DNA of 64,000 nt from Hydrolagus colliei (taxonomy: Eukaryota). Where the stretch lies: assembly GCA_035084275.1 (NCBI GenBank), contig CM068769.1, forward strand, positions 6,758,001-6,822,000. Reading direction: 5' to 3'. Position 1 is the stretch's first letter. Every line of letters begins with the position of its first letter. Shown here piece by piece: positions 4,922-59,020 of this stretch. Below the pieces are notes generated by a model. The model ran no database searches, was not told the DNA's origin, and was given only the letters and a program-made list of their open reading frames with translations. The position numbers were made by a program, and so were the translations under genes.

Positions 4922-4926
4922 ATGGT

Positions 4927-6945: not shown

Positions 6946-6951
6946 TCGTCC

Positions 6952-9980: not shown

Positions 9981-9982
9981 CA

Positions 9983-30802: not shown

Positions 30803-31531
30803 TCACCTACCACGAGTGCCCACATGCCGCACACGAGCCCATGACCCCCCAACAAGCCCTCCCCCCAACTCACCTCCTCGTCCCCCACGATCCCCTTCCA
30901 CCGCAGAGTCACTCTCCTCCAAACAGAAGTCTGGTTCTGTGCAGGGCTCGCACTGGCCGAGTGGATTCCTATTATTTTCCTCAATCTTGCAGCGTTGAAT
31001 AGAGTAGCGGGCGGTACGATATTCATCGATCAGGCCATAGAAACCTGTCTTTGTCCACCCGACGTCGCACAGTTTGTCTTTCGGACAATACAACTCGCTG
31101 TACACAAAATACTTGTGAACTTCCGGCAAATCGCTGAACCTTGAAACTATGTATTTGCACCCGCCACTGAAACACTGCTCCAGACACTGCTCCAGTTGGT
31201 GGTGTAGAACACAAGACAACCTCCGCTTCTCAGAGAAGGTCTCATAACCTTCCCCAGTTTATTAGCCCACGAGTCAGGTTTGTTGTTTTCGCCGAATAGG
31301 ACCTTATGTTCGGTGCATCTCCCGGACGATGAGGGGTAGACGGCGATGTAATTGTACTTTGAGTTGTGATCAGCCATCTGTAAATCGGCCTGGCTGAGGA
31401 TTTGGGCTCTGACTTGGTTGTTCCACTTGTATTTCACCGCCGTGTTACCCTGGCACTGGTCAGCAGTCAGCATGATGAGAAAACAAATCTGTACATCTAC
31501 AGGTTTCTTTATATCGATGCTACTGTGGAAC
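30803..31531 (-). pseudogene. SNAD-like AID/APOBEC-family deaminase, copy 1 (frameshifted)
   Basis: Homolog of 42759-43596 with RCTEHKVL. ACCCC is replaced by TGGAGCA (+2 nt) at the TPC motif, splitting it into ORFs 31147-31542 and 30803-31219. Confidence 0.8.
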
Positions 31532-31789
31532 CTGGGAGACAAACAACAACAATAGTATTACAATTTACAGAGCAACCTTTCACATTGGGAAGACGTCCCT
31601 AGGCGCTGAATAATTAGTTCCGGACCAGAGCAGTGGGGGTGGGGTGGCGTGGTAGAGGGAAGGGGAAGGATAGTAGAAGAGGTGGAAAAGTTAGGAGGGG
31701 AGCAGGAGGCATGGTCAAAGAGGAAGGTATTGAGACCGGCCTTCAGTGAAGCAAGGGAGGAAGTGAGGCGAAGGGATGAAGGCGAAGTG

Positions 31790-33010
31790 ATGTAACAGAA
31801 TGGGTGGACGAGGGCACCGCAGTTGACGTGGTTTACATGGACTTTCAAAAGGCATTTGACAAAGTGCCGCACAAGAGGCTTTTTAGGAAAATAGAGGCCC
31901 AGGTGTTAAAGGGACAGTGGCAGCGTGGATCCACAACTGGCTGCGAGACAGAAAGCAAAGAGCTGTGGTGAGCGGCTGCTTTTCAGATTGGAGGAAAGTG
32001 TGCAGTGGCGCCCGCCAGTGATCAGTTTTGGGACCACTGCTCTTTTTAATATACATTAATGATTTAGATTTGGGTTTAGGGAGTACGATTTCCAAATTTG
32101 CAGACGATACTAAGTTAGGGAGAATAATAAAGGAGGAGGATAGTAGCCAACTGCAAGAGGATATAGATAAAATGATAAAGTGGGCAGACACATGGCAGAC
32201 AAAGTTTAATACAGAGATGTGTGAGGTGATACACTTTGGGAGAAGAAATGAGGGGAGGCAATATAGGCTAGATGGTACAATTTTAAATGTTGTGGAGGAT
32301 GACAGAGACCTAGGGATTTGTGTTAGTGGCTCATTGAAAGTGGCAGGATAGGTAGACAAACCCGTTAAAAAGGCATATGGGATACTAGGCTTTATAAATA
32401 ATGGTATCGAAAACAAAAGTCAGAATGTGCCGATAACCTCTGTAAGACATTGATTAGGCCTCAGCTGGAGTACAGTGTACAGTTCTGGTCACCACAATTT
32501 AGGAAGGATATTAAGGCATTTGATAGACTGCAGAGGAGATTTACTAGGATGGTACCAGGAATGAGGGACTTCAGCTACGAGGAAATGCTAGACAGGCAAG
32601 GATTATTCTCTCTGGAACAATCAAGATTGAGAGAAAACCTAGTAGAGGTTTATAAGGTTATGAGAGATTTCGACAGGGCGAATAGAGAAAGACTGTTTCC
32701 AATGGTGGACGAATCAATCACTCGTGGTCACAATTTTAAATAGTTTCAAAACGAAGCTGAGGGGAGCTGAGGAGAATTTTTTTCACTCAGCGGGTTGTTC
32801 GCATCTGGAATCCATTGCCTGAAAAGGTGGTGGAGGCAGATTGCATAACAGCTTTTAAAAGGGAACTAGATATTTATTTAAGCAGAGCAGGTCTGATAGG
32901 TTACGCTGAGAAAGCTGGGCAGTGGGATAGAGTTGCTCTGTTCAAAGAGCCGGCAAAGACTAGATGTGCCGAATGGCCTCCTTTTGTGCCACATAATTCT
33001 ATGATTCTAT
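31790..33010 (+). mobile_element. CR1 LINE RT/3' fragment
   Basis: GPLLFLIYINDLD...ISKFADDTKLG, IRPQLEYSVQFWSP, and an (ATTCTATG)n tail. Confidence 0.93.
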
Positions 33011-33029
33011 GATTTATATGGATACCTAG

Positions 33030-35060
33030 GCCTAGATTTTAATTCAACCACTGTAGGGTTCTACCATCTCTAGCTGAAATTGCCTCTCCGCGTTCTTCTT
33101 TGCAAAACGCATCACTTCCATTTATACAAATTATAAATAATTTGTTACGTTTCTTGTCACAGTCGTTCTGTGTCCCAATATAGTCGGCAACTTTACCTTT
33201 CACGGTTCGCTATTATTTCCAGCTTTATATAATGTGAACCCCACAAATTGTACTCCCTGTACACATATCCAGGTCAATGATACAGACCAAAAGCAACAAT
33301 GGTCCCAGTAAAGGCACCTAGGGGTCACCACTGCATAAATCCATCCGAACAAAAGTTCTCCATCTCTGCTTGAGTCCTGTCTCCCAGCTAATTGTGTATC
33401 CATGCTGCCACTGTCCCTTTACTATACCGAGATTCTGTTTGGCTTAAAAGTCCCCTAAGTAGAATTTTATCAAACAGCATTTCAAAATCCATATTATTTT
33501 CAGTAATATGACTATCTTCATCCGCCCTCTCAGAATTCATCAGAAATATCCATCAGTTTTGTTAAGCATGTGGCCCCTTCAAGAAACTATTTTGACCACA
33601 AATGAACCCCCGCAAAATATATTTTTCCGGATTATATTTCCAAAATGTTTCACTACTTATGTTATGTTAACATGACCTTCCTATATATCCTTGTAGTATC
33701 CTTCTGCTTCTTTCTGTACCACCTCTGAAAAAGACCCTAAAGTATGAAAACTTTAGGGTCATACTTTAGGACCCTAATGAAAACCAAATATCTGCCACTC
33801 TCTTTTATCTGTCTCCAAGTCATTTTGCTGTCCATGCTACCACTAAAAGAAAACGATTAGAGAGCACTTTCCACTACGGGAGGATCTCCCAATGCGCTAG
33901 AAAGTCAGGGTTCGGGACCCGAGGTGCAGGGTTTGGGGGAGATAAGGGACAGAGGTGAGAGTGCGGCACAAGGCACGGAAAGTAATGTCTTGTGACCGGC
34001 ATTACAGGAAGCAAGGGGGTAAGCGAGAGGAAGGGTCTGTGGGATGGAGTTCCACAGTGTGAGGCCAGAGAGGATAAAAATACGGCCACCGTAAGGCGGG
34101 ATACATAAAGCAAACCAGCCCTTTTTAACAGTGTGCTGTCTACAAATCTCTTATGCGGAACTTTATTAAATGCATTTTGGAAAACCATATCAGTTACATA
34201 ACTTCACCACATTTATCCACCCTATGTGTAACTTCATTATAAAATCTGTTGCAACTTTGTCCGAAACGAGTTTGCTTGAATAAATCTCAGTTTGCTGTCC
34301 TTGATAAACTACTTGTTTTCTGAGTGAAGCAAAATTTTCTTCTCAGATTGTAGATTGAAAAAAAAAAATCTTACCTATGACATTAGGCTGATCGATTTGA
34401 GTTCACGGGTTTATGCCTTGGCCCTTATCTATACAGGTGAGAAGCATTTGCAATGCTCCAATCCTCTGGCACCGTCCCGGTGTCAAAGACGATTGGCACA
34501 TTGTGGTCAACGGTTTAGTTATTTCCACCCTTACGTCACCGCATTAACCTGTTTTGTATCCACTCTGGACTGGGTTAGCTCTGCCTATCATCCACATTGT
34601 TATTAGCTAAAGGTGGACAATGGGCGTAGTGCATTTATTGCAGCATATATCGATTATACAATGCTTCTCGGTGAAGTGCTGCATAATAGCCGTGTTAGGA
34701 AAATTGAATCCCATGTTATCAAAACAACAGTGGCAGTAATGGATACAAAGCTATCTGGGAAACAGCAAGTGGAGAGCCGGGGTTAACTGTTGTAATTCTG
34801 AATGAAGGGATGTGTCCAGTGGTGCCAAACGTGCAGGTGTTTCGACATCCGCAATTCTTAACGAACGAGGCGAGACATGATGGAGGCCAGACTGGGCGAG
34901 AGGAGAGGGGGGGGGGGGGGGGTGGTGGTGGTTGTAGATATAGGGATGCCCTAAATATAGAGAGAAGAATTTCCTAGTTTCAGATGATCCATTGATAGGA
35001 AATATAGAAAACGTTGACCAGACTGCAATACGGATTAGGCAGATTGGTGACGTGGGCAGA
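33030..35060. mobile_element. Old CR1 fragments in both orientations plus an L2 tail (33880-34130)
   Basis: Degenerate INDLD/SKFADD, SLDTGTVPED and WIQ-like motifs. Homologous blocks lie at 45.1-47.2 and 57.1-59.2 kb. Confidence 0.6.
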
Positions 35061-36815
35061 TGATTATTGTAGATTAAATGCGTTTTTGAGAGATGTGTGT
35101 ATTGTCGGTTGAAAAATGATGAGAGTCAGTACGATATCGATGACACAATCGTTGGTGCAGGTTCAGCAAATATTTGTAAACGGCTGCACAGGATGCTAAA
35201 AATGAATCAGACAGCATGCTCTAACTTAGAATTTGTGGCATATATTATTGAAGTGATAATGTTGTTATTATTGATAGAAGTAATAGAATTACTTCTATAA
35301 CTAATATTGGTAGTGACGAAATGTCGATGTCAGTAAAGAGGCTACATTGATCTGAAACTGAGTATTTGCTAAAACACTCAGCATTTATCGAGACTTGAGT
35401 TACCTAAACGCATTGAACACTTCAAACATTTTGCGGATTTCTGTAGCTTAGCGATCAGAATGGTCACATTAAAAGCGAGAGCTAAGTTTTCATTTCAATG
35501 TAGGGGCGAAATATTAGATGTGTTTCCTCAGTCCACAAGACTGATAATAATCCATCAAGGTAACAATAATGAACATCATTTAAATCCACGACTGTTTGTG
35601 GTAGACTGTTGTGCGCTACTGGCTACCACGTTTCGACCACAAATACATACACATTTCAATTGGTAGTATATTCTGTAGATAGTATTGAGAAGTCTCTTAT
35701 TCGTGAAAAGTGCAATGCCAAATACAACAAGGATCATTTGTTATTATTATGTCTTTATTTTATGATGAATCTCCTAAAACGGCAGTGATGCCGCAACTAG
35801 ATAATTGTCTTTAGTTCTGATTCCACGCCGTAGGGAGGATGCAACAGCCGTAGACATTGTGTGAACTAGATTAAAGGTCTGGTCGCAGGAATGCAGTAAC
35901 TAAGCTTAATACTGAAAAGTGGGGTCTAATATTACGAGAAGCCCAAATATGTATTTATATTCCTCCATGGTTTAAGCACAACGTAGAAATTGGATTATAA
36001 AATAACCCACAGTTTTCTATAGTTATTTGCAAGCCAGCGATATGCTTGGCACGAATGTAGTTATGCTCTTGGACAAATTTATCAAGTCTAATCTTCTGCA
36101 TTTCTTACTTCCATTTGTTTCTGATATAACACATGTCTCCTGATATTTTTAAAAAAAAACAAATTAATGACGATTGACTAATCTGCATTGACGTTTTGTA
36201 ATCTAATCTATGATACAATGAACTGTAGTCTTTCATTATTTTAAGACGTATACATTTCTCCTTTACTGCTTTTCATTCTATGAAATTCCCTTTAAATATA
36301 TATATTTCTATTCAAGCTGCTAATTTGCATCTTGCTTAATCATTGTTGATATTTGTGTAATTGCTGTGTATTATTAACAATGTATCTTCAAAACATTTTG
36401 TTCATCTTCAATTACCTGCTCGTCTATCGAATCAAAATATGTTCTTCTCACGGTGGTCTAAATTCTAGGCATTTTGATCAATACATTACTATTCCATTTC
36501 TTTTCTGCGGTAACGTTTACAAATCCCATGTGGAGATCAAATTCTAACATTTTTGGATTATAATTTGTCCTATTTTGTTAAATCTGGAAACGATGTTAGC
36601 AAAATAATCTTCCAGATCTGGGAGAAGAATTCAGTTGAGAAGCTGTTTTTTCAGTCATATTTGCTAAGTATCCTTCATTTTCTCTGTACATAATTACTAT
36701 CATGTACGAATCATTATTGTATTCCCAGGAAACATTCTTAAATTGTTTGTTCATATTAGTGTAACTAATTTCAATGATCCCACGCGCTGCTGGTTTTGCA
36801 GCAGGCATTTCTCCA

Positions 36816-36822
36816 CTATAAA
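36816..36822 (+). promoter_or_regulatory. TATA-like box of GPCR copy 1
   Basis: CACTATAAAGAG about 70 bp upstream of the ATG, conserved in copy 2 (~48853). Confidence 0.45.
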
Positions 36823-36888
36823 GAGGGATGATTTTGTTATTGTCACTTCAAAGGTGAAAAGTTAGTGAGTGTCACCAGCACAAAGGAA

Positions 36889-38463
36889 ATGTCGTTCGCT
36901 TTTATGTTAATAGTGAATCAGATAGAACAGATATACTATCCAATTATTGCAGTTATTGGTGTTCCTGGTAAGTCCTTGTTACATCACGTAAGTCAACGTT
37001 TCAATGCATATTTGATTTTGATATGTATCTTACGTTTCCACTCTCCTCATGATATTTTTGCCATCTTATTTGGTATGTATAGGTTAAATAGAAATGTTCA
37101 TAGTTGGCTACACGCAACAGGGTGCGCTTAATCAAAACGTTGCATTCTTTGATATGACAACGAAGCAAAAACATACAAATTATCAATTAATTTATTCCGT
37201 CGTATCACATGTAAACCAGTATTAGAACAGAGAGGTGCCTTTCAGGGAGTTTATGCAACAACAGCTTGCAGTTATAGAGCCCACCTCATGCAGAGCATTC
37301 CAGAGCACTATATGTTCGCTTCACTACATCAGTTCTAACCAAGCTCTCCTGACCCCCTGTTGCCAATAGCATTAGTTTCAGAATTCTCCCAAACTCCCTC
37401 GATCCTTGCAGCACCTGGCACCTGGATGTCGTTTACTGCCACCGTCAAATTCTACAGCGCGATACCCTGGGTCAGGGAGGCTGTACAACTGCAGGTGTTG
37501 AAGTTGACGATTCTGTTGTTGACGTTTACCGTCAGTTTCTCGAATATCTCTTGTGTTTTGTTTGCAGTTAACCTGGTGACGATTGTGATCCTCTGGCGAG
37601 GAAAGTGCGGTCTCTCCACGTGCATCACTCGCTACCTGGTGGCCATGGCGGGGGCAGATCTGACGGTGGTGATATTTGATGTGATACTGAACCGTGTAGG
37701 TGATCAGTATCTCCCAAGTTTTAATGTTCTGCTTTTCACCCCGATCTGCCTTCTGCACGAGGTGCTGCTGTATGTGACATCAGCGTGTTCTGTCTGGTTC
37801 ACAGTGGCTTTCACCTTTGACCGACATGTCGCCATTTGTCACCAGAAATTCAAATCAACATATTGCACCCAGAGAACGGCGGCTGTGGTTCTGGGAACCA
37901 TCTCTGTGCTGAGCTGTGCGCTATACAGTCCTCTGTGTCTGGAGTTTGAACCGCTCTTCATTATTAACAACAAACCTTGGTTTTGTGCTGTTAAATTAAC
38001 TTATTATCAATCACCGAGATGGACAGCGTTTAAGCTGTTTCTATATGTGTTAACCCCAAGCCTTCCATTTGTCATCGTGTTGCTGCTCAATGCTCTGACA
38101 GTCAGACACATTGTGGTCAGCAGTAGAGCCCGCAGAAGACTCCGAGCCCACAGCCCTGGTGAGAAACACATTGATCCAGAGATAGAGAGTCGGAGAAAAT
38201 CCATTGTTTTACTATTTGTCGTATCTGGGAGTTTTGTACTATTGTGGGTGACTTATGTAGCCGCAAATCTTAGTTATTTAATTATGTATTTTTTAGATAC
38301 AGGCAAGCTACTTGGTGAACTTACAAATGTTGGAGATATATTTCGACTTTTTAGTTGTTCCACAAACACGTGTATTTACGCTTTGACACAATCTAAATTC
38401 AGAGAACAGTTGAAGAATATGGTGAAATACCCGTTTCACAAAATATATAAGTTAGTTTGGTGA
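36889..38463 (+). CDS. GPR139/GPR142-like class A GPCR, copy 1 (intact); exons 36889-36967 and 37568-38463, 324 aa
   Basis: Exon 1 MSFAFMLIVNQIEQIYYPIIAVIGVP+G|GTAAGT splices to TTTGCAG|TT. Motifs VNLVTIVILWRGKCGLS, AGADL, AFTFDRHVAIC and CSTNTCIYALTQSKFRE are present. Confidence 0.93.
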
Positions 38464-39329
38464 ACGAAAAATCAAGGTCTTCTAATTATCACTTACTTGG
38501 TTTATACTTCCTTGGTCCCGGAGTACCCAAAACTGAACACAATAATCCAGATGCAGTCTGACAAAGTCGCCGCTTAGTAGAGGGAACATTTGCTCTAATT
38601 TATTTGTCAGACTGCTTGCCACAAAAGATAAAATCTAATTTGTTTTATTGATAGCGGTTTGCTGCTATGATCTGTCTTCTGTTATTAGTTTACCTGAACA
38701 GCAACATCTTTTTTTGTCCTCCATCATACTTATTTTATCCACGGTCAGAAAGTATTTTATTCTTATTTTTCCGGGACCATAGTGGATGACCTCACGCATG
38801 GTTTTCGGTCGAACACGGTTTCTTTCTTTCACTTAATCTGTCTACGTCCGGATCAGTCATCCGGTTCCCATTGTCACAATATACAGTGCCTCTAAATTGT
38901 GTGCCATGTGACGGTTTGGATGTGAAACTCTCTGCTGCTTCATATATGTCGTTTAATTGTTGGTAAAAAGCTGAGGCAACAGAACGGACCCACTGGCCAC
39001 CATTACAAGGTTACTTACGAAGCAAAGTAATTTAATTTTCGCCGACAACCTATTTTTCTTAGAGCTTTATTTTTCATATGTAGTCACTCGAGATCGCTAC
39101 AGCAACATAAATGACGCAGAATTTGTTTGGTATACCTGACAATCTTTGATTTGTTAATATCTGATCTGTACTGATAATTGTTCTTTATTATTGCTAAAAT
39201 ATTAAATATTATTCATGAGCAACAATTTGTAGTTATCTATCAATTGATGCATTTGCCCTTCACACGCTGAGACATTCTGAGCGCGTCATTGGTGCTGTAT
39301 GATCCCATGCCAGCAAACTTTGACTACCA

Positions 39330-39620
39330 GCACGATCGAACTCTCCAAACTGTTCGCTCACCTATCCACCCACCGGGCGCCTCTGCTCGACTTGCATCGG
39401 CCTCCTTCTCATCCCTCGCAGCTATCGACCCACTATCAGAGCTCATGCTTTCAATGACGCCAAACTCTGGAACACTCTCCATCAATTCCTAAGCCTCGCA
39501 GCTTCACTCCCATCTGTCATGCCTCAATAAAAATGTTGCCATTCGACCATTCTTACCCTCTTACCCCTGCACGGAGTCAGACACCGCCACTGTTAAGTGC
39601 TCTGAGACGCTAGTCTGTGT
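39330..39620 (+). mobile_element. Decayed L2-type 3' fragment (also ~51.37-51.65 kb and ~61.56-61.80 kb)
   Basis: CAAACTCTGGAACACTCTCC...CTCGCAGCTTCACTCC...AAGTGCTCTGAGAC resembles the family tail. Confidence 0.55.
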
Positions 39621-40499
39621 GGAGGGCAGTGCCAGCTCTTTCTGTTCCTGATACTCTTTCGTGCACTAAACCCAACTTGTTGTGTTACAGAAGCAAACAA
39701 CCGAACGTTAAAACATTAGTGTGACAGACTCCAGATCACAGGCTAGTGATGTGGTTGTGGGCACGGTCTTGAGTAGTAGTTACATGAAGAATTATTGAGT
39801 CGACAATCACATCTGTTGATATAAAGTTTAATCAAATAAGAGCAACGTCACAGCACAGCTGAGTATTTTGAGTTTTAAAGCAAAATGCTAAATTATTCCG
39901 AAATCAAACACCTTTTCGTCTTGCTCTCTTGTTACCAACTGTAAAGAGAGTTCATCTTCAATCGCTTCTCTATACCGTGGATAATCAACTCCATATTTTA
40001 TTTTAAGACAATAAAGACTCTTAGTGATAACCACCAGCACACAGACTGTATTAATATAACTGACTGTGGAATCAGTTCACCTTTTAAAGTGTGTCAGTAA
40101 CTGGGACCACCCCAATGCTGTCCGCCCAGGTCACAGAGTTCCTTCATCAGCGTCTGATGGACACCACTCGTCGGCGTGACCTGACAGCTACGTTATGATA
40201 TGCTGACAATTTAATGTTCACCAATTCCGTGCCTAATGTTGGATGCTAGAAATACTCAGAAACAGCCGCTTAATCTGGCGTTTCTTGAGAAGGTTTCTAA
40301 AATCATCCGAAAAGTACTTCGCAGACTACATTGTGAAGTTAACGTGGTTGAAAAGGGACAATCAGTTGGTCAAAGCAGTGGTCCCGGAAATTGTCATGAA
40401 TTTAGATACCAATCAGTTTCTTACATGAACGTAAGAACCAACAATGGTCACCACCACCACCACCACAACAACAACAACAACAACTTTGACTTATATAGC

Positions 40500-40925
40500 G
40501 CCCTCAACGCCGGGTTATTCTCTCTGGAGCAGAGAAGATTGAGGGGAGACCTAATAGAGGTTTATAAGATAATGAGGGGTTTCGACAGGGCAAATAGAGA
40601 AAAACTATTTCCACTCGTGGGTGAATCTGTGACTCGTGGTCACAGATTTAAAATAGTTTCAAGGCGAAGTAGAGGGGAGCTGAGGAGAATTTTGTTCACT
40701 CAGCGAGTTGTTCGAATCTGGAATGCATTGCCTGAAAAGGTGATGGAGGCTGATTCGATAACAACTTTTAAAAGGGAATTAGATCTTTATTTAGGGAGAA
40801 CAGGTCTGTTAGGCTATGGGGAGCGGGCAGGGCAGTGGGATTGAATCGCTCGTTTCAAAGAGCCGGCACAGACTAGATGGGCCGAATGGCCTCCTTTTGT
40901 GCCTTAAAATTCTATGAATCTATGA
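40500..40925 (+). mobile_element. CR1 LINE 3' end (absent at the equivalent site of unit 3)
   Basis: GLFSLEQRRLRGDLIEVYKIMRGFDR...GYGERAGQWD with tail ATTCTATGAATCTATGAATCTA. Confidence 0.92.
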
Positions 40926-41039
40926 ATCTAAACTCAGTCGTCTAAGCTAGCTACCCACCTGTAATCTCGCTAGAAGTTCCCCTTTGCCACCATTTACCCT
41001 CTCAGGGCTCAACCACACAACTCGACTTTCCAATGGCCA

Positions 41040-41640: not shown

Positions 41641-41918
41641 CGGGGTTCGAGGAGCGAGCTGCTAGAGTTGGTGAAGAACTGGTTAAAATTAGTATAGACT
41701 GTTAAAAACAGAGAGTGGCTAGAATGATGCTATGTGATGTTTTTGTATAACTGCTGTACAACATAAGGGAAGTTACTACACATAGTTTCAGTCGTCAAGG
41801 TCACCATTAGAAACCGGTTACAACAGACTGCGATAAGAAGAGCTCATTAGCGAAGAAAGGCAGAGTTGGGTGTAAAAAGAGAATGTGAATAAGCACGAGA
41901 GTGGCATGAGATGCTCAC

Positions 41919-45070: not shown

Positions 45071-48000
45071 ATTTATATGGATACCTAGGCCTCGATTTTA
45101 ATTCACCCACTGTAGGGTTCTACCATCTCTAGCTGAAATTGCCTCTCCGCGTTCTTCTTTTCAAAACGCATCACTTCCATTTATACAAATTATAAATCAT
45201 CTGTTACGTTTCTTGGCACAGTCGGTCTGTGTCCCAATATAGTCGGCAACTTTACCTTTCACGGTTCGCTATTATTGCCAGCTTTATATCATGTGAAACC
45301 CACAAATTGTACTCCCTGTACACATATCCAGGTCAATGATACAGACCAAAAGCAGCAATGGTCCCACTAAAGGCACCTATGGGTCACCACTGCACAAATC
45401 AATCCGAACAAAAGTTCTCCATCTCTGCTTGCGTCCTGTCTCCCAGCTAATTGTGTATCCATGCTGCCACTGTCCCTTTACTATACCGAGGTTGTGTTTG
45501 GCTTAAAATTCCCCTATGTGGAATTTTATCAAACATCATTTCAAAATCCATATTCTTTTACCGTAATATGTCTACCTTCATCCGCCCTCTCCGAATTCAT
45601 CAGAAATATCCATCAGTTTTGTAAAGCATGCGGCTCCTTCAAGAAACCATTTTGACCACAAATGAATCCCCGCAAAATATATTTTTACGGATTATATTTC
45701 CAAAATATTTCACTACTTATGTTATGTTAACATCACTTTCCTATATATCCTTGTAGTATCCTTCTGCTTCTTTCTGTACCTCCTCTGAAAAAGACCCTAA
45801 AGTCATGAAAACCAAATATCTGCCACTCTATTTTATCTGTCTCCAAGTCATTTCGCTGTCCATGCTACCACTAAAAGAAAACGATTAGAGAGAACTTTCC
45901 ACTACGGGAGGATCTCCCAATGCGCTAGAAAGTCAGTGGTCGGGACACGAGCATGCGGAAGGTGCAGGGTTTGGGGGAGATAAGGGACAGAAGTGAGAGT
46001 GCGGCACAAGGCACGGAAAGTAATGTCTTGTGACCGGCATTACAGGAAGCAAGGGGGTAAGCGAGAGGAAGGGTCTGTCGGATGGAGTTCCACAGTGTGA
46101 GGCCAGAGAGGATAAAAATACGGCCACCGTAAGGCGGGATACATAAAGCAAACCAGCCCTTTTTAACAGTGTGCTGTCTACAAATCTCTTATGCGGAACT
46201 TTATTAAATGCATTTTGGAAAACCATATCAGTTACATAACTTCACCACATTTACCCACCCTCTGTATAACTTCATCATACAATCTGTTGCAAGTTTGTCC
46301 GAAACGAGTTTGCTTGAATAAATCTCAGTTTGCTGTCCTTGATAAACTACTTGTTTTCTGAGTGAAGCAAAATTTTCTTCTCAGATTGTAGATTGAAAAA
46401 AAACAAATTCCAACCTATGACATTAGGCTGATCGATTTGAGTTCACGGGTTTATCCCTCGGCCCTTATCTATACAGGTGAGAAGCATTTGCAATGCTGAA
46501 ATCCTCTGGCACCGTCCCGGTGTCAAAGACGATTGGCACATTGTGGTCAACGGTTTAGTTATTTCCACCCTTACGTCACCGCATTAACCTGTTTTGTATC
46601 CACTCTGGACTGGGTTAGCTCTGCCTTTCATCCACATTGTTATTAGCTAAAGCTGGACAATGGGCGTAGTGCATTTATTGCAGCATATATCGATTATACA
46701 ATGCTTCTCGGTGAAGTGCTGCATAATAGCCGTGTTAGGAAAATTGAATCCCATGTTATCAAAACAACAGTGGCAGTAATGGATACAAAGCTATCTGGGA
46801 AACAGCAAGTGGAGAGCCGGGGTTAACTGTTGTAATTCTGAATGAAGGGATGTGTCCAGTGGTGCCAAACGTGCAGGTGTTTCGACATCCGCAATTCATA
46901 ATATATACGAACGAGGCGAGACATGATGGAAGCCAGACAGGGTGAGGGGGGGGGGGGGGGGGGGGGGATTGTAGATATAGGGATGACCTAAATATAGAGA
47001 GAAGAATTTTCTAGTTTCAGATGATCCATTGATAGGAAATATAGAAAACTTTGACCAGACTGCAATAGGGATTAGGCAGATTGGTCAAGTGGGCAGAGGA
47101 TTATTGTAGATTAAATACGTTGTTGAGAGATGTGTATATTGTCGGTTGAAAAATGATGAGAGTCAGTACGAGAACGATGACACAATCGTTGGTGCAGATT
47201 CAGCAAATATTTGTAAACGGCTGCACAGGATGCTAAAAATAAATCAGACAGCATGCTCTAACTTAGAATTCGTGGCATATATTATTGAAGTGATAATGTT
47301 GTTATTATGATAGAAGTAATAGTATTACTTCTATAAGTATAATGGTAGTGACGAAATGTCGATGTCAGTAAAGAGGCTACATTGATCTGAAACTGAGTAT
47401 TTGCTAAAACACTAAGCATTTATCGAGACTTGAGTTATCTAAACGCATTGAACACTTCAAACATTGTGTGGATTTCTGCAGCTCAGCGATCAGAACGGCC
47501 ACATTAAAAGCAAGAGCTAAGTGTTCATTTCAATCTAGGGGCGAAATGTTTGATGTGTTTCCTCAGTCCACAAGACTGATAATAATCCACCAAGATAACA
47601 GTAACGAACATCATTTAAATCCACGGCTGTTTGTGGTAGACTGTTGTGCGCTACTGGCTACCACGTTTCGACCACAAATACATACACATTTCAATTGGTA
47701 GTATATTCTGTAGAGAGCATTGAGAAGTCTCTTAGTCGTGAAAAGTGCAATACCGAATACAACAATGATCATTTGTTCTTATTATGTCTTTATTTTATGA
47801 TGAATCTCATAAAACGGCAGTGATGCCGCAACTAGATAATTGTCTTTAGTTCTGATTCCCACGCCGTAGGGAGGATGCAACAGCCTTAGACATTGTGTGA
47901 ACTAGATTAAAGGGCTGGTCCCAGGAATGCAGAAATTAAGCTTAATAATGAAAAGTGTGGTCTAATATTACGAGAATCCCAAATATGTACTTATATTCCT

Positions 48001-48924
48001 CCATTGTTTAAGCAAAACGTAGAATTTCGATTATAAAATCACCCACAGTTTTCTATAGTTATTTGCAATCCAGCGATATGCTCGGCACGAATGCTGTTAT
48101 GGTCTTGGACAAATTCATCAAGTCTAATCTTCTGCATTTCTTACTTCCATTTGTTTCTGATATAACACACGTCTCCTGATATTTTTAAAAAAACAAAATT
48201 AATGACGATTGAGTAATCTGCATTGAAGTTTTGTAATCTAATATATGATACAATGAACTGTAGTCTTTCATTATTTTAAGACGTATACATGTCTCCTTTG
48301 CTGCTTTTCATTCTATTAAATTCCCTTTAAATATATATATTTCTATTCAAGCTGCTAATTTGCAGCTTGCTTTATCTTTGTCGATATTTCTGTAATTGCT
48401 GTGTATTATTAACAATGTATCTTCAAAACATTTTTGTTCATCTTCAATTACCTGCTCGTCTATCAAATCAAACTATGTTCTTCTCACGGTGGTCTAAATT
48501 CTAGGCATTTTGATCAATGCATTGCTGTTCAATTTCTTTTCTGGTGTAACGTTTACAAATCCCATGTGGAGATCAAATTCTAAAATTTTTGGATTATAAT
48601 GTGTCATATTTTGTTAAATCTGGAAACGATGTTAGCAAAATAATCTACCAGATCTGGGAGAAGAATTCAGTTGAGAAGCTGTTTTTTCAGTCATATTTGC
48701 TAAGTATCCTTCATTTTCTCTGTACATAATTACTATCATGTACGAATCATTATTGTATTCCCAGGAAACATTCTTAAATTGTTTGTTCATATCAGTGTAA
48801 CTAATTTCAATGATGCCACCAGCTGCTGGTTTAGCAGCAGGCATTTCTCCACTATAAAGAGGGATGATTTTGTTATTGTCACTTCAAAGGTGAAACGTTA
48901 GTGGGTGTCAGCAGCACAAAGAAA

Positions 48925-50498
48925 ATGTTACACGCTTTTATTTTAATATTGGAACAGATAGAACTGATATACTATCCAATTATTGCAGTTATTGGTGTAC
49001 CTGGTAAGTCCTCATAACTTGTTAGTTCACGTAAGTCAACGTTTCAATACATGTTTTATTTTGATATGTATCTTATGTTTCCACTCTCCTCATGTTATTT
49101 GTACCATCTTATTTATTATGTATAGGTTAAATATAAATTTTCATAGTTGGCAACAGAGTGCGCTTAATCAAAACATTGCATTATTTTATATGCCAATCAA
49201 GCAAAAACATACAAATTGTCAATTAATTTATTCCTTCGTATCACGGGAAAAAAAGTATTAGAACATAAAGGGCTTTTCAGGGAGTTTACGCAACAACAGC
49301 TTGCAGTTATAGAGCCCACCTCATGCAGAGCATTCCAGAGCACTATATGTTCGCTTCACTACATCAGTTCTAAACAAGCTCTCCTGAATCCCTGTTGTCA
49401 ATAGCATTAGTTTCAGAATTCTCCCAAACTCCCTCGATCCTTGCATCACCTGGCACCTGGATGTGGTTTTCTGCCACCGACAAATTCTACAGCGCGATAC
49501 CCTGGGTCAGGGAGGCTGTACAACTGCAGGTGTTGAAGTTGACGATTCTGTTGTTGACGTTTACCGTCAGTTTCTCGAATATTTATTGTGTTTTGTTTGC
49601 AGTTAACCTGGTGACGATTGTGATCCTCTGGCGAGGAAAGTGCGGTCTCTCCACGTGCATCACTCGCTACCTGGTGGCCATGGCGGGGGCAGATCTGACG
49701 GTGGTGATATTTGATGTGATACTGAACCGTGTAGGTGAGCAGTATCTCCCAAGGTTTAATGTTCTGCTTCTCACCCCGATCTGCCTTCTCCACGTGGTGC
49801 TGCTGTATGTGACCTCAGCGTGTTCTGTCTGGTTCACAGTGGCTTTCACCTTTGACCGACATGTCGCCATTTGTTATCAGAAATTCAAATCAACATATTG
49901 CACCCAGAGATCGGCGGCTGTGGTTCTGGGAACCATCTCTGTGCTGAGCTGTGCGCTATACAGTCCTCTGTGCCTGGAGTTAGAACCGCTCTTCATTATT
50001 AACAACAAACCTTGGTTTTGTGTCGCTAAAATAAGTTATTATCTTTCAATGAAATGGACAGTATTTAAGGTATGTCTATATGTTGTGACTCCATGTATCC
50101 CTTTTGTCATCGTTTTGCTGCTCAATGCTCTGACAGTCAGACACATTGTGGTCAGCAGTATAGCCCGCAGAAGACTCCGAGCCCACAGCCCTGGTGAGAA
50201 ACACATTGATCCAGAGATGGAGAGTCGGAGAAAATCCATTGTTTTGCTATTTGTCGTATCTGGGAGTTTTGTACTATTGTGGGTGACTCATGTAGCCGCA
50301 AATCTTAATTTTTTAATTAAGTATTTTTTACATACAGGCAAGCTACGTGGCGCACTTAGAAATGTTGGAGATATATTTCGACTTTTCAGTTGTTCCACAA
50401 ACACGTGTATTTACGCTTTGACACAATCTAAATTCAGAGAACAGTTGAAGAATATGGTGAAATACCCGTTTCACAAAATATATAAGTTAGTTTGGTGA
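48925..50498 (+). CDS. GPR139/GPR142-like GPCR, copy 2 (intact); exons 48925-49003 and 49603-50498
   Basis: MLHAFILILEQIELIYYPIIAVIGVP+G|GTAAGT; exon 2 is open with the same 7TM motifs. Confidence 0.93.
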
Positions 50499-52534
50499 AA
50501 GAAAAATCAAGGTCTTCTAATTATCACTTACTTGGTTTATACTTCCTTGGTCCCGGAGTACCCAAAACTGAACACAATAATCCAGATGCAGTCTGACAAA
50601 GTCGCCGCTTAGTAGAGGGAACATTTGCTCTAATTTATTTGTCAGACTTCTTGCCACAAAAGATAAAATCTAATTTGTTTTATTGATAGCGGTTTGCTGC
50701 TATGATCTCTCTTCTGTTATTAGTTTACCTGAACAGCAACATCTTTTTTTGTCCTCCATCATACTTATTTTATCCACGGTCAGAAAGTATTTTATTCTTA
50801 TTTTTCCGGGACCATAGTGGATGACCTCACGCATGGTTTTCGGTCGAACACGGTTTCCTTCTTTCACTTAATCTGTCTACGTCCGGATCAGTCATCCGGT
50901 TCCCATTGTCACAATACACAGTGCCTCTAAATTGTGTGCCATGTGACGGTTTGGATGTGAAACTCTCTGCTGCTTCATATATGTCGTTTAATTGTTGGTA
51001 AAAAGCTGAGGCAACAGAACGGACCCACTGGCCACCATTACAAGGTTACTTACGATGCAAAGTAATTTAATTTTCGCCGACAACCTATTTTTCTTAGAGC
51101 TTTATTTTTCATATGTAGTCACTCGAGATCGCTACAGCAACATAAATGACGCAGAATTTGTTTGGTATACCTGACAATCTTTGATTTGTTAATATCTGAT
51201 CTGTACTGATAATTGTTCTTTATTATTGCTAAAATATTAAATATTATTCATGAGCAACAATTTGTAGTTATCTATCAATTGATGCATTTGCCCTTCACAC
51301 GCTGAGACATTCTGAGCGCGTCATTGGTGCTGTATGATCCCATGCCAGCAAACTTTGACTACCAGCACGATCGAACTCTCCAAACTGTTCGCTCACCTAT
51401 CCACCCACCGGGCGCCTCTGCTCGACTTGCATCGGCCTCCTTCTCATCCCTCGCAGCTATCGACCCAATATCAGAGCTCATGCTTTCAATGACGCCAAAC
51501 TCTGGAACACTCTCCATCAATTCCTAAGCCTCGCAGCTTCACTCCCATCTGTCATGCCTCAATAAAAATGTTGCCATTCGACCATTCTTACCCTCTTACC
51601 CCTGCACGGAGTCAGACACCGCCACTGTTAAGTGCTCTGAGACGCTAGTCTGTGTGGAGGGCAGTGCCAGCTCTTTCTGTTCCTGATACTCTTTCGTGCA
51701 CTAAACCCAACTTGTTGTGTTACAGAAGCAAACAACCGAACGTTAAAACATTAGTGTGACAGACTCCAGATCACAGGCTAGTGATGTGGTTGTGGGCACG
51801 GCCTTGAATAGTAGTTACATGAAGAATTATTGAGTCGACAATCACATCTGTTGATATAAAGTTTAATCAAATAAGAGCAACGTCACAGCACAGCTGAGTA
51901 TTTTGAGTTTTAAAGCAAAATGCTAAATTATTCCGAAATCAAACACCTTTTCGTCTTGCTCTCTTGTTACCAACTGTAAAGAGAGTTCATCTTCAATCGC
52001 TTCTCTATACCGTGGATAATCAACTCCATATTTTATTTTAAGACAATAAAGACTCTTAGTGATAACCACCAGCACACAGACTGTATTAATATAACTGACT
52101 GTGGAATCAGTTCACCTTTTAAAGTGTGTCAGTAACTGGGACCACCCCAATGCTGTCCGCCCAGGTCACAGAGTTCCTTCATCAGCGTCTGATGGACACC
52201 ACTCGTCGGCGTGACCTGACAGCTACGTTATGATATGCTGACAATTTAATGTTCACCAATTCCGTGCCTAATGTTGGATGCTAGAAATACTCAGAAACAG
52301 CCGCTTAATCTGGCGTTTCTTGAGAAGGTTTCTAAAATCATCCGAAAAGTACTTCGCAGACTACATTGTGAAGTTAACGTGGTTGAAAAGGGACAATCAG
52401 TTGGTCAAAGCAGTGGTCCCGGAAATTGTCATGAATTTAGATACCAATCAGTTTCTTACATGAACGTAAGAACCAACAATGGTCACCACCACCACCACCA
52501 CAACAACAACAACAACAACTTTGACTTATATAGC

Positions 52535-52965
52535 GCCCTCAACGCCGGGTTATTCTCTCTGGAGCAGAGAAGATTGAGGGGAGACCTAATAGAGGTTTAT
52601 AAGATAATGAGGGGTTTCGACAGGGCAAATAGAGAAAAACTATTTCCACTCGTGGGTGAATCTGTGACTCGTGGTCACAGATTTAAAATAGTTTCAAGGC
52701 GAAGTAGAGGGGAGCTGAGGAGAATTTTGTTCACTCAGCGAGTTGTTCGAATCTGGAATGCATTGCCTGAAAAGGTGATGGAGGCTGATTCGATAACAAC
52801 TTTTAAAAGGGAATTAGATCTTTATTTAGGGAGAACAGGTCTGTTAGGCTATGGGGAGCGGGCAGGGCAGTGGGATTGAATCGCTCGTTTCAAAGAGCCA
52901 GCACAGACTAGATGGGCCGAATGGCCTCCTTTTGTGCCTTAAAATTCTATGAATCTATGAATCTA
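52535..52965 (+). mobile_element. CR1 LINE 3' end (unit 2 copy)
   Basis: Near-identical to 40500-40925 at +12035. Confidence 0.92.
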
Positions 52966-53953
52966 AACTCAGTCGTCTAAGCTAGCTACCCACCTGTAAT
53001 CTCGCTAGAAGTTCCCCTTTGCCACCATTTACCCTCTCAGGGCTCAACCACACAACTCGACTTTCCAATGGCCAGATTGTGATTCTCCTCAGTGGAAGAG
53101 CAGAGGAGGGAGGTCTGCCTCCTTGTCAAGACATTTCGAGGCGAGGCGAAGGGAGTGAAGAAGAGAGAGAGAGGGGCAGAGGGAGCGGTGAATGTAGAGG
53201 GAATGAGGGGGAGAGGCTAAGAGAGTGAGGGAGGGGGGACAGAGGGAGTGAGAGGAGACAAAGTTAGGGTGGCGAAGGAAGTGAAAGAGTGAGGGAGAGA
53301 GGGAGCGGGATGCAGCGGGAACGAGGCAAAGCGAGTGAGGGCGAGAGAGAGCGAGTGGACTGAGGAAGGGACGGAGGGGAGGGAGAGAGGGGGAGAGTTG
53401 AAGGCATTGCGGAAGGGAGCTCGAGAGCCTCGGGCATAGGGGCTTAAGTCGGGTCCGCCAAGGGTGGAGCGGAGGATTCGGGGCGTCGAGGAGACCAGAC
53501 CAGGTGGAGCGAAGGCAACGGGTGCTGGTTTGAGGAGATAGGAGAGGCTGGGAGGTGCAGAAGAGTGGAGAGATTTAAAATCAAGGGTATGCATCTCGAA
53601 ATCGAACTCTTTCTCTTGAAACGCGGAGGAGAATGGGTGAGTGAGGGGGGTGGGTGGGGTGGGTGGTGGGAGTGGCGGGGTTCGAGGAGCGAGCTGCTAG
53701 AGTTGGTGAAGAACTGGTTAAAATTAGTATAGACTGTTAAAAACAGAGAGTGGCTAGAATGATGCTATGTGATGTTTTTGTATAACTGCTGTACAACATA
53801 AGGGAAGTTACTACACATAGTTTCAGTCGTCAAGGTCACCATTAGAAACCGGTTACAACAGACTGCGATAAGAAGAGCTCATTAGCGAAGAAAGGCAGAG
53901 TTGGGTGTAAAAAGAGAATGTGAATAAGCACGAGAGTGGCATGAGATGCTCAC

Positions 53954-54132
53954 GTGAACACCATGTGTCCAAGAAAGGATAAAAGTGTTGAGACACAGGA
54001 ATAGAGCAGAGACGGAGGAGCAGAAGAAGAAGGACATGATGGAAGATACTGTAATGTGACAGTACCCAAGCCGCTCTCGGGAAGGAACAACCGCTGATGG
54101 AAGAAACTTTACCACGACAGCAAGGAAGCCGA
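53954..54132 (-). other. Duplicate of the candidate hydrophobic exon (mini-exon candidate 54308-54366)
   Basis: Same sequence as 41919-42097 at +12035. Confidence 0.4.
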
Positions 54133-54793
54133 CTGGAAGGAAAAGACAAGAAAAGGACTATCCCTCTTAACCTCGAGTAATGTGTGCCGGGTATTGTGTA
54201 TGAGGATTACGTGTGCCCTGTAATGTAATATTGCTTGCTTTAGTGTCAGCTCTATGAGTATACCTGAGTAAAAGAAACCTGGTGTAAAAGACATAAATCA
54301 GTAGTACCTGGTCAATCGGAGGCTGGCTGTAACCTCATTGTTGACCGGAGAAATGATATTTTCCACCTGAGAAATTAATCTCTAACAGAGCGAGGGAGTG
54401 ACGCAGGGGAAAGAGATAGAGAGGTCTTTAGAATTAGAGTTAGAGAATAAAAGTAGAGGGTTGTGGGTGGCAGTATGAGAGAATGAGATTGAGTGTGTTT
54501 TTGACTGTCTGTCTGAGAGTGTGTGTGACTGTGTGTTTACAATTTAATAAAGAGACATCAGTCATGCCAAAGCAAGCTTTATTACTAGATAATAATTTCA
54601 CCAACTGCAGCCCCAAAACCCCCAGTCTTCAGCCCCCCAGCCCCCAGCCCAAGCCACATTCTTTCATTTCATTGAAGTGTCCCCCGCTTATATTCAAGCT
54701 GCTCTTACTAACCCGGAATCCCACTGCGACACTGATCAGACTGTGGGATGTCTGAGCAGCCGAACACGGGTGTGATGTGCAGCCTACTTGCCT

Positions 54794-55631
54794 CTAACCT
54801 CGCCCTCGCCTCCTAGTTGGTTTCTTGCGAACCGGTCGACTCCCTGGACTCTTTGGCACCCCGCCAACCCCTCGTCCTCTACCACCCCTTGGCTCCCCGT
54901 CACTCTTTGGCGTCCCACGAGCTCCTAGCCCCCAATGACCTACATACAACCCACCAACCCCTCCCCCCATCGTAAGTCCTCGCTCCACACGATCCCCTTC
55001 CACCGCAGAGTCTCTCTCCTCCAAACAGACGTCTGGTTCTTTGCAGGGCTCGCACTGGCCGAGTCGATTCCTATTATTCTCCTCAATCTTGCAGCGGTGA
55101 CTCGAGTAGCGGGGGGTACGATATTCATTGATCAGGTGATGGAAACCTGCCTTTGTCCACCCGACGTCGCACAGTTTGTCTTTCGGACAATACACCTCGC
55201 TGTACACAAAATACTTGTGAACTTCCGGCAAATCGCTGAACCTTGAAATTATGTAGTTGCACCTGCCACTGAAACACTGCTCCAGACACGGGGTGTTGGT
55301 GGTGTAGAACACAAGACAAACTCCGCTTCTCAGAGAAGGTCTCATAACCTTCCCCAGTTTCTCAGCCCACGAGTCAGGTTTGTTGTTTTCGCCGAATAGG
55401 ACCTTATGCTCGCTGCATCTCCAGGACGATGAGGGGTAGACGGCGATGTAATTGTACTTTGAGTTGTGATCAGCCGTCTGTAAATCGGCCTGGCTAAGGA
55501 TTTGCGCTCTGTCTTGGTTGTTCCACTTGTATTCCACCGCGGTTTTACCCTGGCAATGGTCAGCAGTCAGCATGATGAGAAAACCCATCTGTACATCTAC
55601 AGGTTTCTTTATATCGATACGACTGTGGAAC
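54794..55631 (-). CDS. SNAD-like deaminase, copy 3 (main exon intact, protein identical to copy 2)
   Basis: Identical 282-aa ORF in the ORF track, with the same acceptor and zinc motifs. Confidence 0.78.

Positions 55632-58986: not shown

Positions 58987-59020
<34 letters not shown>

What the first reader, a model, noticed from the sequence alone, without database searches (positions are those of the whole stretch)
30803..55631. Tandem family of AID/APOBEC-like (SNAD-type) deaminases about 20 kb from the TCR V array
Three minus-strand copies (30803-31531 broken; 42759-43596 and 54794-55631 intact) encode x-SEH...CLVFYTTNTPCLEQC...YFVYSEVY...HRC...CEPC. This matches the motif order of secreted novel AID/APOBEC-like deaminases (recalled pattern HSE...CVVFYTxNSPCxxxC). 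SNADs are known from fish and other vertebrates with largely unknown function, and shark TCR alpha is known to be somatically hypermutated. An amplified deaminase cluster linked to TCR V genes points to a possibly undescribed immune module. A functional link to the TCR is inference only.
Basis: partly seen in the sequence, partly recalled or inferred. Interest (0 to 1): 0.9.

Follow-up and report, generated by a model that had tools for sequence, protein, structure and literature searches.

The report
Duplicated shark-type secreted deaminase (SNAD1) exons
Three tandem copies (one broken, two identical) of the main coding exon of a fast-evolving SNAD1-type AID/APOBEC-like deaminase lie about 20 kb from T-cell-receptor V segments; this gene family is already known from shark plasma, and nothing here ties it functionally to the receptor genes.

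Summary
Minus-strand exons at 42759-43596 and 54794-55631 are open and identical. The copy at 30803-31531 is broken at the PCxxC motif. The SNAD reading also holds. The ORF scores 52.3 bits against Pfam SNAD1 (cut-off 25). It keeps C-x-E, PCxxC and the SNAD1/2 four-cysteine cluster. It starts at the same phase-2 intron junction as five shark SNAD1 genes. Its AlphaFold model matches only AID/APOBEC structures, though weakly. Several caveats apply. The copies are exon 2 only, and no signal-peptide exon exists anywhere in the window; shark SNAD1 introns reach 28.6 kb, so it may lie beyond the edge. The "family" is a 12,035-bp segmental duplication that also carries a GPR139-like receptor gene and transposon debris. 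Copies B and C sit in a 99-100% identical tract, so they reflect a very recent event or an assembly artefact. pN/pS between A and B is 1.04, and intactness is not significant (P about 0.15). The TCR link is positional only: five other shark SNAD1 loci have no V segments nearby, SNADs are secreted, and shark TCR-alpha hypermutation is attributed to AID. Verdict: a new, divergent member of a known kind, of moderate-to-low interest.

The parts
42759..43596 (-). SNAD1-like main coding exon (exon 2), copy B, open from the acceptor to the stop
   Evidence: ORF. Pfam SNAD1 52.3 bits against a cut-off of 25. Junction identical in position and phase to shark SNAD1 genes.
54794..55631 (-). SNAD1-like exon 2, copy C, identical in sequence to copy B
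   Evidence: Identical translation. 100% DNA identity at an offset of 12,035 bp.
30803..31531 (-). SNAD1-like exon 2, copy A, a pseudogene
   Evidence: Split into two frames. About 6.4% diverged from B in the domain.
31175..31198 (-). Lesion in copy A: CTGGAGCAGTGT is duplicated in place of the ...ACCCCGTGT... of copies B and C. This gives a +2 bp frameshift and loss of the Pro-Cys of PCxxC.
   Evidence: Alignment columns 501-520; coordinates.
43374..43382 (-). C76-S-E78: first zinc ligand and catalytic glutamate (copy B; 55409-55417 in copy C)
   Evidence: C76 and E78 invariant in 16 family members. Located at the N-terminus of model helix 77-82.
43239..43256 (-). P118-C119-L-E-Q-C123: second zinc-binding motif (copy B; 55274-55291 in copy C)
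   Evidence: P118, C119 and C123 invariant. Follows model strand 108-116, at the start of helix 120-123.
42990..43064 (-). SNAD1/2-specific cysteine cluster C184 ... C197-x-x-C200 ... C206 (HRC, CEPC, DVC)
   Evidence: C184 and C197 invariant, C200 and C206 at least 90% conserved. The feature is described in PMC5889660. Model strands 182-187 and 190-199.
42759..42989 (-). 76-codon Gly/Arg-rich tail after the last conserved Cys. Relatives stop 2-15 residues after that Cys, apart from three bony-fish proteins with long Cys-rich extensions. Either a lineage-specific extension or read-through into low-complexity DNA.
   Evidence: The tail is poorly conserved between A and B (27% mismatch).
43597..43620 (-). 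Polypyrimidine tract plus CAG splice acceptor, identical in all three copies
30506..42581 (.). Tandem unit A of the roughly 12-kb segmental duplication
   Evidence: Self-BLAST.
42582..54616 (.). Tandem unit B
54617..62632 (.). Tandem unit C, which lacks the equivalent of about 47335-49250
38500..47334 (.). Tract that is 97.6-100% identical to 50535-59386 at an offset of about 12,035 bp (100% for about 40000-45000): a recent duplication or conversion, or an assembly artefact
   Evidence: Windowed identity. B/C 99.35% over 5.35 kb.
37360..38463 (+). GPR139-like rhodopsin-type 7TM receptor ORF, unit A (open)
   Evidence: Pfam 7tm_1; family assignment.
49395..50498 (+). GPR139-like 7TM receptor ORF, unit B (open)
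59552..60652 (+). GPR139-like receptor, unit C, with an in-frame stop (pseudogene)
145..10287 (-). Cluster of six TCR V-like gene segments, three with canonical 23-bp-spacer recombination signals
43623..44802 (.). SINE-like sequence and LINE reverse-transcriptase fragments directly upstream of exon 2, in what would be intron 1
   Evidence: ORFs; weak RVT_1 hit.

Best explanation
[quoted passage not shown] They were amplified passively as part of a 12-kb segmental duplication that also carries a GPR139-like receptor gene and transposon fragments. Copy A is dead. Copies B and C are one sequence present twice. Shown: family membership by sequence, retention of the zinc-binding and catalytic residues (C76-x-E78, P118-C119-x-x-C123) and of the disulfide cysteine cluster, the conserved exon junction, and the duplication anatomy. 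Inferred: if a leader exon lies upstream beyond the window, as the long introns of shark relatives allow, the product is a signal-peptide-bearing, disulfide-stabilised zinc cytidine deaminase. It would be released into plasma or the secretory pathway and would deaminate cytosines in pathogen nucleic acids, as proposed for SNADs in general. The nearness to TCR V segments is positional, not functional.
For: Pfam SNAD1 52.3 bits against a cut-off of 25. Exhaustive HMMER finds only SNAD1-like relatives, including five shark species. C76, E78, C109, P118, C119, C123, C184 and C197 are invariant, and C200 and C206 nearly so. 31 of 39 strongly conserved family positions are kept, within the family range of 0.64-1.0. 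The exon starts at the same phase-2 junction before the conserved Phe as in the Scyliorhinus, Stegostoma, Heptranchias and Mustelus genes, whose introns span 1.7-28.6 kb; this also excludes a processed retrocopy. The model places CxE and PCxxC at helix N-termini after strands, as in deaminases. Foldseek's top 33 PDB hits are all APOBEC1/3A/3B/3G/3H or AID, with probability up to 0.97. Duplication anatomy. SNAD1 proteins are present in nurse shark plasma (PMC9207270). SNAD tandem expansions with pseudogenes are described (PMC5889660).
Against: No leader or signal-peptide exon was found anywhere in the window: 8, 20 and 32 kb upstream of copies C, B and A. pN/pS between A and B is 1.04, and exon divergence (6.4%) is not below neutral flanks (4.8-5.5%). 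The open frame of B is expected by chance with P of about 0.15. The terminal branch is very long, 2.73 against a median of 0.94. The conserved PFSxW loop is deleted, and a 76-codon low-complexity tail follows the domain. The model is only of medium confidence (pLDDT 68.9), and Foldseek TM-scores are 0.3-0.4 with E-values around 1e-2. Deaminase activity has never been shown for any SNAD (PMC11004436). No expression data could be consulted.
Confidence: 0.62

Rival explanations
1. All three copies are non-functional relics: orphan exon-2 copies that lost, or never had, their leader exon when the 12-kb unit was amplified, and that now drift neutrally. B and C are still open only because they are young.
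For: No leader exon in the window. pN/pS 1.04, with exon divergence at or above the neutral level. P(open by chance) about 0.15. Neighbouring members of the array are already dead: SNAD-A, GPCR-C and the GPCR at 12.4-13.3 kb. The surroundings are transposon-rich. The branch is long, a conserved loop is deleted and the tail looks like read-through.
Against: All eleven key catalytic and structural residues and 79% of conserved positions are retained. The acceptor site is perfectly preserved in all copies. Shark SNAD1 introns of 20-29 kb mean the leader exon could simply lie outside the window. The pN/pS test includes the branch of a known pseudogene (A), and SNADs are known to evolve under diversifying pressure (PMC5889660), so a ratio near 1 does not discriminate.
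Confidence: 0.3
2. Copies B and C are not two genes: the 99-100% identical tract at an exact 12,035-bp offset is an assembly artefact (a falsely expanded tandem repeat or duplicated haplotype), so the locus has one open copy and one pseudogene.
For: 100% identity over about 5 kb (40.0-45.0 kb against 52.0-57.0 kb), flanked by 97.6-99.8%, inside an array whose other parts are 88-97% identical. The two ORFs are identical.
Against: The tract is mosaic rather than a clean block: 18 mismatches and 3 gaps over 5.35 kb. Unit C differs structurally, with a deletion of about 1.9 kb and a GPCR part only about 90% identical that carries its own stop. This fits real unequal crossing-over or gene conversion. 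There are no Ns or gaps in the window.
Confidence: 0.2
3. The exon-2 copies are alternative cassettes spliced to a single shared leader exon upstream of the array, giving several deaminase isoforms from one promoter.
For: No copy has its own leader exon in the window, while all keep an identical, strong acceptor. Mosaic paralog patterns and alternative splicing were noted in AID/APOBEC-like families (PMC5889660).
Against: B and C are identical and A is broken, so no isoform diversity would result at present. Opposite-strand GPCR genes and many transposons would lie within the introns. There is no direct evidence.
Confidence: 0.08
4. One reading: the deaminase array is functionally coupled to the adjacent TCR locus, for example as a T-cell mutator that contributes to TCR hypermutation.
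For: Only physical proximity: about 20 kb from V segments, on the same strand. No leader exon was found, so a non-secreted form is not excluded.
Against: The family is defined by secretion and is found in plasma (PMC5889660, PMC9207270). Shark TCR-alpha hypermutation is attributed to AID (PMC5931798). Five other shark SNAD1 loci (about 180 kb) contain no V segment or GPR139-like gene. About 14 kb of satellite and simple repeats and a dead GPCR separate the array from the V cluster. The array's co-amplified partner is a GPCR, not an immune gene.
Confidence: 0.03

Closest known systems
SNAD1 (Pfam PF18744), including the uncharacterised SNAD1-like genes of sharks (Scyliorhinus canicula XP_038642922, Stegostoma tigrinum XP_059498464, Heptranchias perlo XP_067834216, Mustelus asterias XP_078059526) and the nurse shark plasma SNAD1 proteins
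   Same: HMM match above the curated cut-off, C-x-E and PCxxC motifs, the four-cysteine cluster, the FYTTNTPC and HKYFVYS blocks, and the two-coding-exon layout with the same phase-2 junction.
   Different: At most 41% identity to any relative, which is normal for this family: the nurse shark SNAD1s share about 30% with their best shark hit. Very long branch. The PFSxW loop is deleted. A 76-codon Gly/Arg-rich tail is present. No leader exon was found in the window.
Teleost SNAD1 (carp Cap31/SNAD1, zebrafish si:dkey-96g2.1)
   Same: Same family. Multi-copy and lineage-specific, with 2-4 exons. Proteins are found in blood and seminal plasma, and expression is immune-associated (PMC11004436).
   Different: Different vertebrate class. 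No expression or protein data exist for the window gene. Activity is unknown in both.
Mammalian APOBEC3 tandem arrays
   Same: Fast-evolving zinc cytidine deaminase genes amplified in tandem, with pseudogenes. Fold-level similarity (Foldseek top hits).
   Different: APOBEC3s are intracellular H-x-E enzymes with helices 5 and 6. No sequence-level similarity is detectable. Here the amplified unit is a mixed 12-kb segment, not deaminase genes alone.
AID (AICDA), the enzyme credited with shark TCR-alpha hypermutation
   Same: Same superfamily and fold class. Relevant to the neighbouring locus.
   Different: AID is a single-copy, slowly evolving, intracellular and nuclear enzyme unlinked to antigen-receptor loci. 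The window gene belongs to the secreted sister clade (PMC5889660, PMC5931798).

Membership tests
[quoted passage not shown] | Match to the curated family profile above its gathering score | tested here: met
   PF18744: 52.3 bits against a cut-off of 25, E 9e-14, profile positions 17-184 of 213. SNAD2 falls below its cut-off (21.8 against 25). The N-terminal part of copy A also passes (26.6 bits).
[quoted passage not shown] | Zinc-chelating and catalytic motifs [H/C]xE and PCxxC | tested here: met
   C76-S-E78 and P118-C119-L-E-Q-C123 lie in invariant columns of a 16-member alignment. In the model they sit at helix N-termini after strands. Copy A fails this test: PC is lost.
[quoted passage not shown] | N-terminal signal peptide (the 'secreted' in the name) | tested here: inconclusive
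   The ORF is exon 2 only. In shark relatives the signal peptide is on a separate 32-33-codon exon 1.7-28.6 kb upstream. No such exon was found in the window by an N-terminal profile HMM or by ATG/hydrophobic/donor scans. It may lie beyond 64000 or be absent.
[quoted passage not shown] | SNAD1/2-specific cluster of four cysteines (C ... CxxC ... C) near the C-terminus | tested here: met
   C184, C197-E-P-C200 and C206. The columns are invariant or at least 90% conserved. Feature as described in PMC5889660.
[quoted passage not shown] | [quoted passage not shown] | tested here: inconclusive
   The model shows helices 27-30 and 51-56 between strands 20-25 and 65-68, and strands 182-187 and 190-199 at the C-terminus with no helix 5 or 6. 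This agrees with the description, but the model has pLDDT 68.9 and no third C-terminal strand is formed.
[quoted passage not shown] | Cytidine deaminase activity; presence of the protein in body fluids | not testable with these tools
   Activity has not been shown for any SNAD (PMC11004436). No transcript or proteome data are available for this window.
Classical AID/APOBEC deaminases (AID, APOBEC1-4) | H-x-E ... PCxxC within a five-strand, six-helix fold; intracellular | tested here: not met
   The first ligand is Cys, not His. There is no sequence-level hit to any APOBEC or AID chain with the single sequence or the family profile. Fold similarity exists but is weak (TM 0.3-0.4). It works like them in principle but is not a member.
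   No V segment within 10 kb on either side (nor inside the long introns) of five shark SNAD1 genes (L001-L005). These are paralogues or co-orthologues, so the test is limited.
   No expression or repertoire data are at hand. The literature credits AID (PMC5931798).

The most novel reading that the evidence does not exclude
A SNAD-derived deaminase embedded at the V-distal edge of a cartilaginous-fish TCR alpha/delta locus has lost its leader exon and is made as a non-secreted protein with a Gly/Arg-rich nucleic-acid-binding tail in lymphocytes, acting on the adjacent antigen-receptor genes or their transcripts. That would be a second, AID-independent receptor-diversifying deaminase in jawed vertebrates.
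Probability: 0.03. Interest if true: 0.9.

Novelty: new member of a known kind. Interest (0 to 1): 0.33.

Why it matters
SNADs are a barely studied sister clade of AID/APOBEC, and no SNAD substrate or activity is known. A divergent, recently amplified shark copy adds a data point on how fast these genes turn over in cartilaginous fishes. It also gives a concrete ORF to look for in plasma proteomes and to express for the first activity assays. The genomic setting (co-amplification with a GPR139-like receptor, next to TCR V segments) is a curiosity that could matter only if expression data tie it to lymphocytes. As it stands, the locus is an ordinary lineage-specific expansion with pseudogenes, as already described for this family.

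Tried and rejected
1. The word-seeded protein search found nothing for the deaminase. The exhaustive HMMER search was needed.

2. Sequence searches against solved structures found no deaminase, either with the single ORF or with the 16-member family profile. The only sub-threshold hit, a streptococcal pilin, is a short spurious match.

3. The leader-exon search gave nothing usable. An N-terminal profile HMM over all six frames returned one hit with E below 0.01 (39606-39716 and 51641-51751). It lies on the wrong strand, has no in-frame ATG and ends at a stop without a donor, so I rejected it. Two rule-based scans (ATG, hydrophobic stretch, phase-2 GT donor) returned only 'MDTQLAGRQ...' with a weak donor amid transposon-derived sequence, and one non-signal-like peptide in unit A that is not conserved in B or C. 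I rejected both.

4. Zinc-ligand distances in the model could not be measured, because the coordinates are not exposed.

5. The nurse shark plasma SNAD1 sequences are not in the held supplement, so no direct comparison was possible.

6. The retrocopy hypothesis is rejected, because the ORF begins at a conserved intron junction with an intact acceptor.

7. A literature search for the shark GPR139-like expansion found nothing relevant.

8. The species of origin could not be established. The best protein identities are 58% for the GPCR and 41% for the SNAD, so the species' own proteome appears to be absent from the libraries. For the same reason, the lack of a near-identical database protein says nothing about expression.


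Full report
**1. What is there.** The region holds three minus-strand copies of one open reading frame. Copies B (42759-43607) and C (54794-55642) translate to identical 282-residue products. Copy A (30803-31542) is split over two frames. A three-way DNA alignment shows that B and C are identical across the ORF. In A...ACCCCGTGT... is replaced by a duplicated CTGGAGCAGTGT, a +2 bp frameshift that removes the Pro-Cys of the PCxxC motif. The window contains no Ns. A polypyrimidine tract and CAG lie immediately 5' of each ORF.

**2. What it is.** The ORF matches Pfam SNAD1 at 52.3 bits (gathering score 25, E 9e-14). SNAD2 falls below its cut-off. The word-seeded search found nothing. An exhaustive HMMER search of 1.84 billion representative proteins found 17 relatives, the best 37-41% identical. 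The ten looked up are two sets of unnamed Logan-assembly proteins and eight unnamed 'uncharacterized protein' entries. The named ones come from Scyliorhinus canicula, Stegostoma tigrinum, Heptranchias perlo, Pristiophorus japonicus, Mustelus asterias, Amia, Latimeria and Xyrauchen. All 15 relatives placed in the alignment match Pfam SNAD1.

In the alignment, C76, E78, L82, C109, P118, C119, C123, C184 and C197 are invariant, and C200 and C206 are at least 90% conserved. The active site is therefore C-x-E ... PCxxC. The C184 ... C197xxC200 ... C206 set is the four-cysteine cluster that Krishnan et al. describe as specific to SNAD1/2 (PMC5889660). The window protein keeps 31 of 39 strongly conserved positions, within the family's own range of 0.64-1.0.

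**3. Gene structure.** In five shark SNAD1 loci the gene has a leader exon of 32-33 codons (signal peptide plus the start of an ELNxxVLxxIV helix). One large exon encodes everything else. The two are joined by a phase-2 intron immediately before a conserved Phe. Intron length runs from 1.7 kb (Stegostoma) and 3.5 kb (Scyliorhinus) to 20-22 kb (Mustelus) and 28.6 kb (Heptranchias). The window ORF begins at the same junction and phase (tctcccag|G TTC). The three copies are therefore exon 2 of a SNAD1-type gene. They arose by genomic duplication, not retroposition.

No leader exon is detectable anywhere in the 64-kb window. It was not found by a profile of relatives' N-termini (the one wrong-strand hit was rejected), nor by two explicit scans for ATG, hydrophobic stretch and phase-2 donor. 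Because shark introns reach 28.6 kb and only 8-32 kb of upstream sequence is available, this neither proves nor excludes a complete gene.

**4. Fold.** An AlphaFold2 model built on the 16-sequence alignment is of medium confidence (pLDDT 68.9, pTM 0.66). It has the expected order strand-helix(CxE)-strand-helix(PCxxC)-strand-helix-strand-strand. There are helices inserted between the first two strands and C-terminal strands instead of helices 5 and 6. Foldseek against the PDB returns AID/APOBEC structures as the top 33 hits (APOBEC1, A3A, A3B, A3G, A3H, AID). Probabilities reach 0.97, but TM-scores are only 0.3-0.4 and E-values are around 1e-2. The match is thus specific but weak. Zinc-ligand distances could not be measured. 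Sequence-only searches of the PDB find no deaminase, and no SNAD structure has been solved.

**5. The 'tandem family' is a segmental duplication.** Self-comparison shows a unit of about 12 kb. Unit A is 30506-42581, unit B is 42582-54616, and unit C runs from 54617 to about 62632. Each unit carries the SNAD exon (minus strand), SINE-like sequence and LINE reverse-transcriptase fragments just upstream of it, and a plus-strand rhodopsin-type receptor ORF. The receptor belongs to the very large 'probable GPR139' expansion of cartilaginous fishes: 2,138 hits, best identity 50-58%. Units A and B are 91-97% identical over most of their length. The GPCR part of C is about 88-95% identical to that of B.

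Overlying this is a tract (38.5-47.3 kb against 50.5-59.4 kb) that is 97.6-100% identical at an offset of about 12,035 bp, including roughly 5 kb of perfect identity that contains SNAD copies B and C. The two 'intact' genes are therefore one sequence duplicated or converted very recently, or an assembly artefact. Unit C has its own 1.9-kb deletion and its own stop codon in the receptor gene, which argues for a real, mosaic array, but reads are needed to settle it.

**6. Constraint.** Between A and B, pN/pS is 1.04 (29 nonsynonymous and 7 synonymous changes). Exon divergence (6.4%) is not lower than that of flanking DNA (4.8-5.5%). Given neutral substitution and indel rates measured in the same units, exon B would remain open with probability of about 0.15. 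The protein sits on a very long branch and lacks the conserved PFSxW loop. It also carries a 76-codon Gly/Arg-rich tail where most relatives stop. None of this separates diversifying selection, which is typical of SNADs (PMC5889660), from decay, especially as A is a known pseudogene. Functional status is open. I put about 0.6 on at least one potentially functional copy and about 0.3 on relics.

**7. The TCR link.** Six V-like segments lie at 145-10287 on the minus strand. Three end in YFCA/YICA followed by CACAGTG, a 23-bp spacer and an A-rich nonamer. One is clearly V-alpha-like. No V segment lies beyond 10.3 kb. Between the V cluster and the array are a frameshifted GPR139-like pseudogene (12.4-13.3 kb) and about 14 kb of satellite and simple repeats.

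Nothing but distance connects the deaminase to the V genes. The family is secreted and found in shark and carp plasma (PMC9207270, PMC11004436). Shark TCR-alpha hypermutation is attributed to AID (PMC5931798). About 180 kb around five other shark SNAD1 genes contains neither V segments nor GPR139-like genes.

**8. Comparison with what is known, and novelty.** SNAD1 in cartilaginous fishes has been described at protein level (PMC9207270). Tandem lineage-specific expansions with pseudogenes and rapid divergence are the stated hallmarks of SNADs (PMC5889660). No SNAD activity has been demonstrated (PMC11004436). This locus is a new, unusually divergent member of that known kind. It has three minor peculiarities: co-amplification with a GPR139-like receptor gene, a Gly/Arg-rich tail, and a position at the edge of a TCR V cluster.

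**9. Verdict.** The SNAD assignment is supported. The 'immune module linked to TCR' reading is not supported. Interest is moderate to low (0.33). The residual high-novelty reading, a leaderless lymphocyte deaminase acting on the neighbouring receptor genes, is not excluded but has only proximity in its favour (about 3%).

Noticed in passing
window 37360-38463, 49395-50498, 59552-60652, 12448-13312 (all + strand): Four copies of an intronless rhodopsin-type receptor from the very large 'probable GPR139' expansion of cartilaginous fishes (2,138 database hits; hundreds annotated per shark genome). Two are open, one has an in-frame stop and one is frameshifted. I found no paper describing this expansion. 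Its position next to TCR V genes recalls the olfactory-receptor genes that flank the mammalian TRA locus (from my own knowledge).
   Followed up: partly
window 38500-47334 vs 50535-59386: A 97.6-100% identical tract at an offset of about 12,035 bp (perfect for about 5 kb), inside an array that is otherwise 88-97% identical. Either recent gene conversion or unequal crossing-over, or an assembly artefact.
   Followed up: partly
window 17169-24381 and 24800-27010: Two copies of a 3.6-kb tandem repeat (91% identical), followed by about 2.2 kb of degenerate G/T-rich (minus-strand) minisatellite. GC skew is extreme (down to -0.5) and GC content reaches 58%. This block separates the V cluster from the deaminase array.
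   Followed up: no
window 4911-5255 (-): This V segment (…DSAVYYCALS) scores about as well against antibody VH and nanobody domains as against TCR V-alpha. My scan found no canonical heptamer-23-nonamer signal next to it. It could be one of the Ig-like V segments used by shark TCR-delta, or a pseudogene.
   Followed up: no
window 42759-42989 and 54794-55024 (-): The deaminase ORF continues for 76 codons past the last conserved Cys into a Gly/Arg-rich basic tail (…GEPRGGRGRGVGG…RPVRKKPTRRRGRG). It resembles RGG-type nucleic-acid-binding low-complexity tails. It may equally be read-through into a C-rich simple repeat.
   Followed up: no
window 30865-30876 (-): In the tail of pseudogene copy A there is a consensus splice donor (GAG|GTGAGT). 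Copies B and C read ACTTAC at that point. This may be a remnant of a further exon junction that the open copies have lost, or it may be chance.
   Followed up: no
P0001, P0006, P0007 (Xyrauchen, Amia, Latimeria SNAD1-like proteins): These bony-fish relatives carry a long C-terminal extension made of repeated CxxC modules (about 120-150 residues). The shark proteins and the window ORF lack it.
   Followed up: no
L003 (Heptranchias), L004 and L005 (Mustelus): Shark SNAD1 genes have a tiny leader exon separated from the main exon by introns of 20-29 kb. Automated annotation of such genes would easily miss or mis-join exons.
   Followed up: partly
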